The notes below the pieces were generated by a model. The model ran no database searches. It was not told the origin of the DNA and saw nothing but the letters and a program-made list of their open reading frames with translations. The position numbers were made by a program, and so were the translations under genes. 64,000 nt of DNA from Phaeosaccion multiseriatum (lineage: Eukaryota; Protista; Ochrophyta, other classes). Below, piece by piece: positions 23,962-25,998 of the stretch; the stretch's first letter is position 1; each line of letters starts with the position of its first letter. The DNA lies in contig OZ218954.1 of the NCBI GenBank assembly GCA_965112735.1, forward strand, positions 3,534,001-3,598,000, given 5' to 3'.

Positions 23962-25998
23962 ATGAACGATTTTGAGGAGGCGCTGGAGCGCATTCAAGAG
24001 TGGCGAGATCGGAGCGAGGGGGGGGTAGGCATTGACGAGCTTTCGCTTTTGCTGGCAGCCGTGCTTTCCACGGTCGACTTTAAGTCGCGCGCTGAGAGAG
24101 AAGGGCCATGGAAGACGAAGGGCCACACCCCCCTTCACGCGCTCGCGATGAGAGATGAAGCCATGGAGGTGCAGATGCGGGGAAGCGTGAAGCTGTTGAA
24201 GGATTGCGGGCTGGACATTAATGCGCAAATAGGAGAAGAGTATGACGAGGGAGAGACTCCACTGACCCTAGCGGCGATGTATGGGCACTTTGGGTTGGTG
24301 CAGGGGCTCGTCGAGGAGGGCGCAGATGTGAACAAAAGTGATAACGAGTCCAATGTGCCCTTGGCTCAAGCTGCGGGTGGTGGCAAGTCCGGGGATTCAG
24401 CTTATCCCACGATCGTGGCTTACCTTTTGAAGCATGAGGCCACGGTGAAGGACAGCTTTGCCTTGCACCGCGCCGCACTATCCGGTTGTCCGGAGTCAGT
24501 GAGCATACTACTCAAGGCCGGGGCCGAGGTAGAGGAAAGACAATGGGATACCACACCAGTCCAGTTCTGCTGTGTGGGGCGGGGCAGGGGCAGCACCAGC
24601 GATAGATTGGAGGCCCTGTCCTTGCTGCTAGAGGCAGGAGCTGATTTGAACGTGAAGGACCAGTTCGGCTGCTCTCTCATGCACAAGGCCGCTTCTGCCG
24701 GGCACGGTGAACTCATCGACGACCTCTTCCGTCGAGGGCTGGCGGTGGACGCGAAGGACTCTGATCAGCGCACTCCTCTGCACTTCGCTGTTAGGAACGG
24801 TAATTCCTCAAGTGTGAAGGCGCTCATCCGCCTCGGTGCCCCCCTCGACGCTGTTGATTCCGATAAGAGCACGCCACTCCACTTGGCTCTGCAGTTCAAA
24901 AAAATGGACATTGCGGCCGAGCTGATCGACGAAGGAGCTAATGTGAACGCCAAGCGAGACGGCAACATTGCACCCCTTCATCTGGCAGCGGCACGGGGCA
25001 GCATGAGGCTTGCGTACCTCCTGTTGGAGGCTGGGGCTGAGATCGATGCTCTCACTGACGGTGGGAGCAGCCCCTTGATGGTGTGCATATCTATGGCAAA
25101 GGACAACAACGTTTCAGCTCTGCTTCGGCGTGGATGGTTGTACCGGCCGAGGGAAGGCAGGAGGAAGGTGACGGCACTGCTACTAGAAGTGGGCGCTGCA
25201 GTCAGCAAGCCAGTCATGGCCTTGGTGGGCGAGAGCGATTGTGGGGATGTCGTTGCCGCATCTTTGAGCGAAGAACGAGGGGCCCGACATGCTTCTGATC
25301 GTGTTTGCAATACTATAGCTGGACACATCTCCAGCTCTGCCTACTCTGAGGCCGCCAAGGAGGGCCGTGTGGTGAGAGTGCGCTTGGTAGACAGGACGAC
25401 AGGGAAGAGGAAGGAGACGCAGTACACACTGAGCATACCTCTGATGGAGCTGCTGATGGGCAAGGCGAGAGGGAGGCGACGAGAAGAGGGAGGGAGCTCT
25501 GACGACTCGGACAGAGACGACACGGCCACAGGCAGTTTTCGCACCATGCTGGACCCGGCGGGGCGTGGCTTCATGGGCATCAAGGGCAAGGCCAAGGACG
25601 AGGTGGAGATGACGTTTGACGGAGTGGACTTTACCGAGGAGGGCTTTGCAGCTGTGGTGCAGTTCGTCACGACGGGTAGCGTCAAGAGCCTGCTTACCCG
25701 AGGGCGCCATGGGCAGATGAGCAGTAGCACCAGCTCCGAGACGGCCGGTGGCGGCGGCGACAGAAGAGGTGGTGGGAGTAATAGTGAGGAAGCATTAGGA
25801 GAGAGGAAGAGGGAGCGCGTGAAGCTGTTTGACGATCTGAGAGCGGAGCAGGCTCTGCAGGCAGCGGACTTCTTCTGTATCGAGGCCATGTCGAGGGAGG
25901 TGAAGGCGCTCATGACTCTGTACGGCTTCGAGCTGGGCAAGGGGGGGGAGGAAGGGGAGCCACCGAGGAAGCGAAGCAGAGAAGGCCTCCAATCGTAG
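23962..25998 (+). CDS. Intronless ANK-BTB protein, copy 2 (678 aa)
   Basis: Same architecture as copy 1; open ORF; tail PPRKRSR. Confidence 0.88.
   Translation: MNDFEEALERIQEWRDRSEGGVGIDELSLLLAAVLSTVDFKSRAEREGPWKTKGHTPLHALAMRDEAMEVQMRGSVKLLKDCGLDINAQIGEEYDEGETPLTLAAMYGHFGLVQGLVEEGADVNKSDNESNVPLAQAAGGGKSGDSAYPTIVAYLLKHEATVKDSFALHRAALSGCPESVSILLKAGAEVEERQWDTTPVQFCCVGRGRGSTSDRLEALSLLLEAGADLNVKDQFGCSLMHKAASAGHGELIDDLFRRGLAVDAKDSDQRTPLHFAVRNGNSSSVKALIRLGAPLDAVDSDKSTPLHLALQFKKMDIAAELIDEGANVNAKRDGNIAPLHLAAARGSMRLAYLLLEAGAEIDALTDGGSSPLMVCISMAKDNNVSALLRRGWLYRPREGRRKVTALLLEVGAAVSKPVMALVGESDCGDVVAASLSEERGARHASDRVCNTIAGHISSSAYSEAAKEGRVVRVRLVDRTTGKRKETQYTLSIPLMELLMGKARGRRREEGGSSDDSDRDDTATGSFRTMLDPAGRGFMGIKGKAKDEVEMTFDGVDFTEEGFAAVVQFVTTGSVKSLLTRGRHGQMSSSTSSETAGGGGDRRGGGSNSEEALGERKRERVKLFDDLRAEQALQAADFFCIEAMSREVKALMTLYGFELGKGGEEGEPPRKRSREGLQS

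What the first reader, a model, noticed from the sequence alone, without database searches (positions are those of the whole stretch)
24650..25840. Patchwork gene-conversion tracts shared between tandem and distant, inverted paralogues
Seen: copy 2 carries AACGTGAAGGACCAGTTCGGCTGCTCTCTCATGCACAAGGCC (~24650-24690), identical to inverted copy 4 (~50547-50588), while its neighbours 1 and 3 carry a different, one-codon-longer variant. The copy 2 BTB loop (~25698-25835) is almost identical to copy 5 (~61831-61970), whereas copies 1 and 3 share another loop. GNSSSVK unites 2/3/5, STC(M/V)K unites 1/4, and SAAAAGCPES unites 1/5. No single tree explains these patterns. Inference: short-tract ectopic gene conversion shuffles individual variable ankyrin segments among paralogues and generates combinatorial specificity, as in chicken Ig or trypanosome VSG diversification.
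Basis: partly seen in the sequence, partly recalled or inferred. Interest (0 to 1): 0.8.

Follow-up and report, generated by a model that had tools for sequence, protein, structure and literature searches.

The report
Ankyrin gene copies swap DNA patches
Five neighbouring copies of an intron-free ankyrin-repeat gene in a stramenopile alga have copied short stretches of DNA onto one another, a real but well-known way (gene conversion between gene copies) in which families of binding proteins get remixed.

Summary
Copy 2 (23962-25998) is almost identical to tandem copy 3. It carries a 90-base stretch identical to the inverted copy 4, 25 kb away. It also carries a 170-base stretch identical to copy 5, 36 kb away (about 270 bases counting the adjacent match to copy 5's sister gene). 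Both stretches have zero synonymous differences, against dS 0.2-0.6 in the flanks. Both pass permutation tests (p<1e-4). They place copy 2 differently in trees, and AU tests reject the flank topology (p=8e-6).

Across 17 subfamily genes on this chromosome, 31 such tracts of 56-650 bases were found, with partners up to 0.7 Mb apart. Ectopic (interlocus) gene conversion is therefore well supported.

Three parts of the reading are not supported. Nothing points to a programmed, antibody- or VSG-like system. Tracts are not confined to ankyrin segments; the longest lies in a disordered loop of a BTB-fold tail.

Public read contigs were too short to link the junctions, so an assembly artefact is unlikely but not formally excluded.

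Earlier follow-ups of this scan reached the same conclusion on other loci of this genome. This is a known kind of process in a new family.

The parts
20300..29410 (+). Tandem array of three 3164-bp units (c1, c2, c3 and two spacers). About 490 nt upstream of each start codon plus the first ~200 nt of CDS are 100% identical in all three units.
20798..22834 (+). c1: intron-free gene of 678 aa, with about 10 ankyrin repeats, a BTB-fold tail and a basic C-terminal patch. It differs from c2 and c3 in blocks (87-93% locally).
23962..25998 (+). c2: the mosaic copy of 678 aa. It is c3-like in backbone (97.4% nt overall) and holds two imported tracts.
27126..29153 (+). c3: 675 aa. It is identical to c2 over 23962-24574 (= 27126-27738), with one difference over 23962-24603, and nearly identical over 25154-25608.
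49289..51235 (-). c4: inverted paralogue. It has an in-frame TGA at 51233-51235 inside the conserved N-terminal leader, and the basic tail is missing. It is probably a truncated gene or pseudogene that still has a 597-626-codon open frame. It is the likely donor of the 90-nt tract.
60063..62126 (+). c5: 687 aa. It is sister to the next family gene just beyond the window (L006). It is the donor lineage of the c2 loop tract.
24604..24693 (+). Conversion tract 1 in c2, exactly identical to c4 50543-50632 (-). It spans the end of one ankyrin repeat and the hairpin and start of helix 1 of the next (residues 215-244). 19 consecutive polymorphic sites match, and there are 0 differences at 21 synonymous sites.
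50543..50632 (-). Partner of tract 1, in c4.
25542..25811 (+). Conversion tract 2 in c2. 25542-25643 is identical to L006, and 25642-25811 is identical to c5 61776-61945. It covers the end of a BTB helix and the disordered low-complexity loop (residues ~561-617). There are 0 differences at 41 synonymous sites. Elevated similarity continues to about 25842.
61776..61945 (+). Partner of tract 2, in c5.
25190..25313 (+). Older tract shared by c2 and c3 (c1: 25190-25274), identical to L004, a family gene 0.47 Mb away on the opposite strand.
24812..24894 (+). Tract in c2 and c3 identical to L010, a family gene 0.70 Mb away.
24994..25153 (+). Block in which c1=c2 and c3 is the odd copy (pattern 3|12). 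This points to exchange or point change within the array.

Best explanation
The five genes belong to a very large intron-free family of a stramenopile alga. Each has about 10 ankyrin repeats, a BTB-fold tail and a basic, NLS-like end.

The three tandem copies are young or recently homogenised; their flanks are 100% identical. Repair of DNA breaks by homologous recombination, using a non-allelic paralogue as template (interlocus gene conversion without crossover), has since pasted short stretches of other family members into them. In c2 these are a 90-nt patch from the inverted, probably defective c4, and a ~270-nt patch from the c5/L006 lineage.

The same process operates across the whole chromosomal cluster, with tracts of 56-650 nt and partners 3 kb to 0.7 Mb apart in either orientation. 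It acts on germ-line or clonal evolutionary time.

Shown: the tracts, their significance, their synonymous-site identity and the tree conflict. Inferred: the direction of transfer (c4 to c2, c5 lineage to c2), the repair mechanism, and that selection on the binding face of the ankyrin repeats retains the new combinations.
For: - Exact c2=c4 identity over 90 nt and c2=c5 identity over 170 nt, against background identities of 84% and 81.5%. The runs of matching polymorphic sites are 19 and 36; the permutation maxima were 18 and 14 (p<1e-4).
- dS is 0 inside both tracts, against 0.21-0.63 in the flanks. The identity is therefore shared descent of the DNA, not protein-level convergence.
- c4 and c5 are the best genome-wide matches of the two tracts.
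- PHI: 0 of 1000 permutations reached the observed value, for 4, 5 and 17 sequences.
- Segment trees give ((c2,c3),c1) at 95-100% support in three segments. In 25610-25850 they give (c1,c3) at 100/99 and (c2,(c5,L006)) at 99/97. AU tests agree.
- Both flanks of each tract return to the c2/c3 type, and c4 is inverted. This indicates a non-crossover patch rather than unequal crossing-over.
- Private point changes are only about 5 per copy in c2 and c3 (0.25%), whereas the blocks differ by 10-25%. At 86 of 131 variable sites, all states also occur in other paralogues.
- 31 significant tracts were found among 136 gene pairs.
- Direction: c5 and L006 stay sisters along the whole gene while c2 changes partner. 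c4 continues into a tract identical to L012 right after the shared patch.
- dN at a-priori DARPin-type positions is 0.52, against 0.19 in the framework.
Against: - The public read data are de Bruijn contigs of at most 855 nt. They match c2 without variant letters, including c2-specific 130-186-nt pieces. They cannot link the two sides of either tract, so the assembly itself is not independently verified.
- No orthologous array from another strain or species was found. Donor and acceptor are therefore inferred, and non-reciprocity is untested.
- 45 of 131 variable sites among c1-c3 carry a state seen nowhere else in the sampled family. Point mutation or unsampled donors therefore also contribute.
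- Pooled dN/dS at the predicted binding positions is about 1.0, not clearly above 1.
Confidence: 0.85

Rival explanations
1. The reverse reading, for part of the pattern. The array is old, and homogenising conversion or unequal crossing-over has made the flanks and much of the genes identical. The divergent blocks are old variation that escaped homogenisation, perhaps kept by selection ('islands of divergence').
For: Spacers and the 5' ends are 100% identical while the internal blocks differ. c2=c3 over 613 nt. 45 variable sites have states private to the array. An earlier follow-up on another locus of this genome reached this reading (s1-348064).
Against: This reading cannot explain why c2's two odd blocks are identical, synonymous sites included, to c4 and c5, which otherwise differ from c2 by 16-19%. 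It is also still gene conversion, only with a different acceptor. It may well hold for the blocks where c1 differs from c2 and c3.
Confidence: 0.25
2. Assembly, collapse or polishing artefact: reads of c4 or c5 were mis-placed on c2 while the tandem repeat was assembled or polished.
For: The array is a 3.2-kb tandem repeat with 100% identical spacers, a classic trouble spot. The read contigs available here could not bridge the junctions.
Against: - The window has no N, and the genome is in 22 contigs.
- The frames stay open.
- The c2-c5 similarity decays at its edges (97% over 251 nt), and c2 carries private changes inside and next to the tract.
- The same kind of mosaic occurs among single-copy, non-tandem family genes 0.5-0.7 Mb away.
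- Contigs from two studies match c2 with no alternative letter at the tract junctions (24603/24604, 24693/24694, 25641/25642 and 25811/25812), and 130-186-nt pieces match c2 only.
Confidence: 0.05
3. A programmed diversification system, as in chicken Ig pseudogene conversion or trypanosome VSG switching. Conversion would be induced and frequent in somatic or clonal cells, drawing on silent donors such as the defective c4.
For: c4 looks like a broken gene yet served as a partner. Replacement changes concentrate on predicted binding positions. A similar idea was raised for LRR and TPR receptors of the brown alga Ectocarpus (PMC3341825, abstract).
Against: - Exchange involves many intact genes in all directions.
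- Tract ends show no recurrent position beyond shared ancestry.
- Most tracts lie in the conserved C-terminal half, where homology is highest.
- No read-level heterogeneity was seen at the tracts (weak evidence).
- No single expression site is evident.
Confidence: 0.03
4. Independent convergent substitutions, driven by selection for the same peptide in c2 and c4 or c5.
For: The patch lies on the predicted binding face.
Against: There are zero synonymous differences at 21 and 41 synonymous sites, where about 5 and 12 are expected. Codon-level indels are shared.
Confidence: 0.01

Closest known systems
Interlocus (non-allelic) gene conversion in clustered recognition-gene families, such as plant NLR/R-gene clusters, MHC and KIR, and human segmental duplications (PMC3790853; general knowledge)
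   Same: Short patches are copied between paralogues, in either orientation, mostly on the same chromosome. The result is mosaic genes and conflicting trees. Replacement changes concentrate on the ligand-binding repeats.
   Different: The family here is ankyrin plus a BTB-fold tail, intron-free, in a stramenopile alga. No function, target or expression is known.
Exon shuffling in the LRR-ROCO and NB-ARC-TPR candidate receptors of the brown alga Ectocarpus (Zambounis et al., PMC3341825)
   Same: It concerns a related algal lineage. It is a repeat-protein family with high turnover, diversifying selection on the repeat domain, and paralogy obscured by exchange of repeat units.
   Different: In Ectocarpus each repeat is one exon and whole exons are shuffled. 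Here the genes have no introns, and tracts ignore repeat borders and extend into the non-repeat tail.
Chicken Ig pseudogene conversion and trypanosome VSG mosaic formation
   Same: Templated patches from paralogous donors, one of which (c4) looks defective, create new combinations.
   Different: Those systems are programmed and somatic or clonal, with a single expressed acceptor and silent donors. None of these features was found or could be tested here.
Ankyrin proteins with a small C-terminal E3-adaptor domain: ABTB1/2-type ANK-BTB proteins and poxvirus ANK/F-box-like host-range families (own knowledge)
   Same: The order of domains is the same: a variable ankyrin array followed by a small adaptor-type domain. 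They occur as multigene families.
   Different: The tail here has no Pfam BTB hit and no sequence relatives outside this genome. Only a moderate fold match exists. Cullin binding is untested.

Membership tests
Interlocus gene conversion tract | A stretch of sharply raised identity between two paralogues, bounded on both sides by their usual divergence, longer than chance allows | tested here: met
   c2-c4: 90 nt at 100%, against 84% background. c2-c5: 170 nt at 100%, against 81.5%. Permutation p<1e-4.
Interlocus gene conversion tract | The identity includes synonymous sites (shared descent, not selection) | tested here: met
   dS=0 in both tracts, against 0.21-0.63 in the flanks.
Interlocus gene conversion tract | The phylogeny of the tract conflicts with the phylogeny of the flanks | tested here: met
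   Segment trees and AU tests; PHI.
Interlocus gene conversion tract | No exchange of flanking markers (non-crossover) | tested here: met
   Both sides of each tract are c2/c3-type. c4 is inverted and the array is collinear.
Interlocus gene conversion tract | Non-reciprocal transfer: the donor is unchanged and the acceptor's ancestral state is lost | not testable with these tools
   This needs an orthologous array or a pre-event sequence. None was found.
Programmed conversion systems (chicken Ig, VSG) | One expressed acceptor fed by an array of silent donor copies | tested here: not met
   31 tracts among 17 mostly intact genes, with many partners and directions.
Programmed conversion systems (chicken Ig, VSG) | Events arise somatically or within clonal lineages at high rate | not testable with these tools
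   Only contigs of public runs were available. No alternative letters were seen at the tracts.
Ankyrin repeat proteins (Pfam Ank, Ank_2) | Significant matches to the ankyrin repeat models | tested here: met
   E 1e-42 to 1e-60, far above the gathering scores, in all five copies.
BTB/POZ domain | Match to the Pfam BTB sequence model (PF00651) | tested here: not met
   No BTB hit even at E<=10. No PDB sequence hit with a family profile.
BTB/POZ domain | BTB fold (three strands and five helices in the canonical order) | tested here: inconclusive
   AF2 model with a 44-sequence alignment: core pLDDT 70-82, mean 56. Foldseek found no match at E<=0.001. VIA-align's best hit was the KLHL26 BTB domain at Z 8.2, rmsd 3.8, 105 residues aligned, and about 35 of the top 50 rows are BTB, KCTD or Skp1. 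The atlas feature search also returned BTB families among the rows shown (best score 0.86). The evidence is coherent but of middling strength.
BTB/POZ domain | Binding to cullin-3 or oligomerisation | not testable with these tools
   Needs biochemistry.
DARPin-like variable binding face | Replacement changes concentrated at repeat positions 2, 3, 5, 13, 14 and 33 | tested here: met
   Pooled dN 0.52 at those positions, against 0.19 in the framework. dN/dS about 1.0 against 0.54, and 1.5-2 in close pairs with small counts.

The most novel reading that the evidence does not exclude
Conversion among these ankyrin-BTB genes may be frequent enough to act as a working diversity generator within clonal algal populations. 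Intact and broken copies such as c4 would serve as a donor library for a repertoire of cullin-type substrate receptors used in conflict with viruses or parasites. This would be the first such system based on ankyrin repeats.
Probability: 0.05. Interest if true: 0.8.

Novelty: new member of a known kind. Interest (0 to 1): 0.3.

Why it matters
The finding documents cleanly, with donors identified in cis, that a large lineage-restricted ankyrin-BTB family of an alga evolves by patchwise copying between paralogues over distances up to 0.7 Mb. Trees of this family are therefore unreliable, and tandem copies cannot be dated by their divergence. The family also becomes a reasonable candidate for a fast-evolving recognition repertoire. 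It does not reveal a new mechanism.

Tried and rejected
- The whole-protein word search returned only generic ankyrin proteins at 24-35% identity and not the family itself.
- The same search restricted to the tail (residues 418-678) found nothing.
- A scan of viral contigs with a tail profile found no relatives.
- The metagenome scan and the exact-protein look-up were also blank.
- Pfam at E<=10 and a profile search of PDB sequences gave no BTB hit.
- The first AF2 model, from a 28-sequence alignment, was unusable at pLDDT 36.
- Foldseek on the second model gave no significant match.
- Laying public runs gave only short de Bruijn contigs, which cannot link tract junctions. Depths did not scale with copy number, so they were not used.
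- One AU call (c1-3 with L004 in the N-terminal segment) was uninformative because of identical rows.
- The big representative-protein search was not run. The tail's identity is peripheral to the claim.
- Convergence was rejected on synonymous sites.
- Unequal crossing-over alone was rejected because both flanks of each tract are of the c2 type and c4 is inverted.

Full report
**What is there.** The window holds five open frames of one family: c1 20798-22834, c2 23962-25998 and c3 27126-29153 on the + strand, c4 49289-51169 on the - strand, and c5 60063-62126 on the + strand. All five carry strong ankyrin-repeat matches.

c1-c3 form a tandem array with a 3164-bp period, spanning about 20300-29410. 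The ~490 nt upstream of each start codon and the first ~200 nt of coding sequence are 100% identical in all three units. The two spacers are nearly identical.

c4 has an in-frame TGA at 51233-51235 inside the conserved N-terminal leader, and it lacks the basic C-terminal tail. It is probably truncated or a pseudogene.

The window is part of a 67-Mb genome in 22 contigs. The family is very large: 770 first-look candidates, with at least 65 scored matches. About 23 closer relatives lie mostly on the same contig, at 3.55-3.61 and 4.02-4.33 Mb.

Neighbouring genes are ordinary cellular genes. They include an Spb1 rRNA methyltransferase and a Dymeclin/Hid1 gene split into pieces. The Spb1 protein is closest to xanthophyte and brown-algal proteins (62-64% identity). 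The organism is therefore a stramenopile alga near those groups; I could not name it.

**Check of the observation.**
- The 42-mer occurs exactly twice, in c2 and, reverse-complemented, in c4.
- Site by site, the three tandem copies fall into blocks. c1 is the odd copy over 24159-24603, 24791-24981 and 25275-25505. c2 is the odd copy over 24654-24686 and 25609-25955. c3 is the odd copy over 24994-25153.
- In its first odd block, c2 equals c4 at every site, including a one-codon deletion. In its second, c2 equals c5, including two shared codon insertions.
- GNSSSVK in c2, c3 and c5 (and in L015, 0.77 Mb away) rests on the same derived nucleotides.
- STC(M/V)K and SAAAAGCPES are the majority state of the subfamily. 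They do not by themselves link c1 with c4 or c5.

**Is it more than chance?**
- In a GENECONV-style test on polymorphic sites, c2-c4 match over 19 consecutive sites (90 nt exact, 24604-24693 = 50632-50543). c2-c5 match over 36 consecutive sites (25642-25811 = 61776-61945). The largest values in 10,000 permutations were 18 and 14.
- The PHI statistic was reached by none of 1000 permutations, for 4, 5 or 17 sequences.
- Synonymous divergence is 0 in both tracts (0 of 21 and 0 of 41 synonymous sites), against 0.21-0.63 in the flanks of the same pairs. This rules out convergence at the protein level.
- Genome-wide, c4 and c5 are the best matches of the two c2 stretches.
- Trees of 17 subfamily genes give ((c2,c3),c1) with 95-100% support in three segments. 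In 25610-25850 they give (c1,c3) at 100/99 and (c2,(c5,L006)) at 99/97.
- AU tests reject c2+c3 in that segment (p=7.7e-6) and c2+c5+L006 in the N-terminal segment (p=2e-7). The sister of the whole array also changes, from c4 in the N-terminal segment to L004 further on (p=0.004).

**Scope.** Across the 17 genes, 31 exact tracts passed a pairwise permutation p<=0.001 in 136 pairs. They are 56-650 nt long.
- c2 is identical to L006 over 25542-25643, directly adjoining the c5 tract. The imported piece is therefore about 270 nt and comes from the c5/L006 lineage.
- c2 and c3 are identical to L004 (0.47 Mb away, opposite strand) over 25190-25313, and c1 over 25190-25274.
- c2 and c3 equal L010 (0.70 Mb away) over 24812-24894.
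- c4 equals L012 right after the stretch it shares with c2.
- No tract involved the two members on other contigs. These two are also the most diverged.
- 18 of the 31 tracts lie in the better-conserved C-terminal half. Exchange therefore follows homology rather than targeting variable ankyrin segments.

**Mechanism.**
- Each c2 tract is flanked on both sides by c2/c3-type sequence, and c4 is inverted. A crossover would have rearranged the region. These are therefore non-crossover patches, that is, interlocus gene conversion.
- c2 and c3 carry only about five private point changes each (0.25%), while the odd blocks differ by 10-25%. At 86 of 131 variable sites, all states recur in other paralogues. 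Most of the difference between the tandem copies was therefore imported, not mutated in place.
- The direction is inferred. c5 and L006 remain sisters along the whole gene while c2 switches partner. The c4 stretch is continuous with L012-like sequence.
- For the blocks where c1 differs from c2 and c3, the reverse reading remains possible: old variation that escaped homogenisation. It is still gene conversion.

**What the protein is.**
- Variability peaks at the hairpin and first-helix positions of each repeat. At the six positions randomised in designed ankyrin binders, pooled dN is 0.52, against 0.19 in the framework. dN/dS is about 1.0 against 0.54, and 1.5-2 in close pairs with small counts. 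This fits a fast-changing binding face but does not prove positive selection.
- The tail has no Pfam or PDB sequence match. It has no relatives in the word search, the viral contigs or the metagenome contigs.
- A model built with 44 family sequences has a core at pLDDT 70-82 and two disordered loops. Foldseek found nothing significant.
- The exhaustive structural search put a KLHL26 BTB domain first (Z 8.2, rmsd 3.8, 105 residues aligned). About 35 of the top 50 rows were BTB, KCTD or Skp1 domains. The atlas feature search also pointed to BTB.
The c2-c5 tract covers the end of a helix plus the disordered low-complexity loop.
- A role as a cullin-type substrate receptor is inference from this architecture.

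**Artefact check.** Public runs from two studies hold the region, but only as short de Bruijn contigs. These match c2 without alternative letters at the tract junctions, and they include 130-186-nt pieces specific to c2. They cannot link the two sides of a tract.

Several points argue against an artefact:
- There is no N in the window.
- The reading frames stay open.
- The c2-c5 similarity decays at its edges, and c2 carries private changes beside the tract.
- The same mosaicism occurs among non-tandem genes far away.

Spanning long reads remain the decisive test.

**Comparison and verdict.** This is interlocus gene conversion in a clustered, fast-evolving repeat-protein family. The process is well known from plant NLR clusters, MHC and human segmental duplications (PMC3790853). 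It resembles the exon shuffling described for candidate receptors of the brown alga Ectocarpus (PMC3341825).

The features that define programmed systems such as chicken Ig or VSG were either not met (one acceptor with silent donors) or could not be tested (somatic occurrence).

Earlier follow-ups of this scan reached the same conclusion on other loci of this same genome. I retested the kind of claim here, on this window's DNA. One earlier lead, relatives on giant-virus-like DNA, was not reproduced by my scan.

The novelty lies in the family and the organism.

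Noticed in passing
window 62150-63607 and 54349-54576: A long triplet-periodic, strongly strand-skewed tract (GC skew -0.66). It is open in several frames on both strands. It is 84% reverse-complementary, at 3-nt steps, to a 225-nt stretch at 54.35 kb.
   Followed up: no
window 49289-51235 (-): c4 keeps a 597-626-codon open frame, yet it has a TGA in the N-terminal leader and no basic tail. It is a possibly defective copy that still exchanges sequence with intact genes.
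   Followed up: partly
window 14119-16560 (+): The Spb1 rRNA methyltransferase open frame (813 aa) has FtsJ and DUF3381 but not the Spb1 C-terminal domain found in all its relatives. The gene probably continues past an intron. The ankyrin genes, by contrast, are intron-free.
   Followed up: no
window 30383-35416 (-): Dymeclin/Hid1-type matches are split over separate open frames. This is an ordinary multi-exon cellular gene lying between the array and c4.
   Followed up: no
window 553-1080, 3359-3886, 4194-4669, 6868-7233, 41435-41900: Several tandem repeats, with periods of 64-67 bp, 88 bp, 28 bp (inside an ORF) and 8/12 bp. The 8/12-bp repeat recurs at two places 34 kb apart.
   Followed up: no
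window 23300-24339 and 26004-26400: The run from the second study (X5) has no contig on the spacer or the first 380 nt of c2, although it covers 24340-26003. This could be low coverage or a strain difference in the array.
   Followed up: no
L004 and L007 (G000 C5 4.026 and 4.033 Mb): Two family genes 6.7 kb apart are identical over ~650 nt of their 5' halves but only ~84-97% identical further on. This is the same pattern of mosaic within fresh homogenisation as in c2 and c3.
   Followed up: partly
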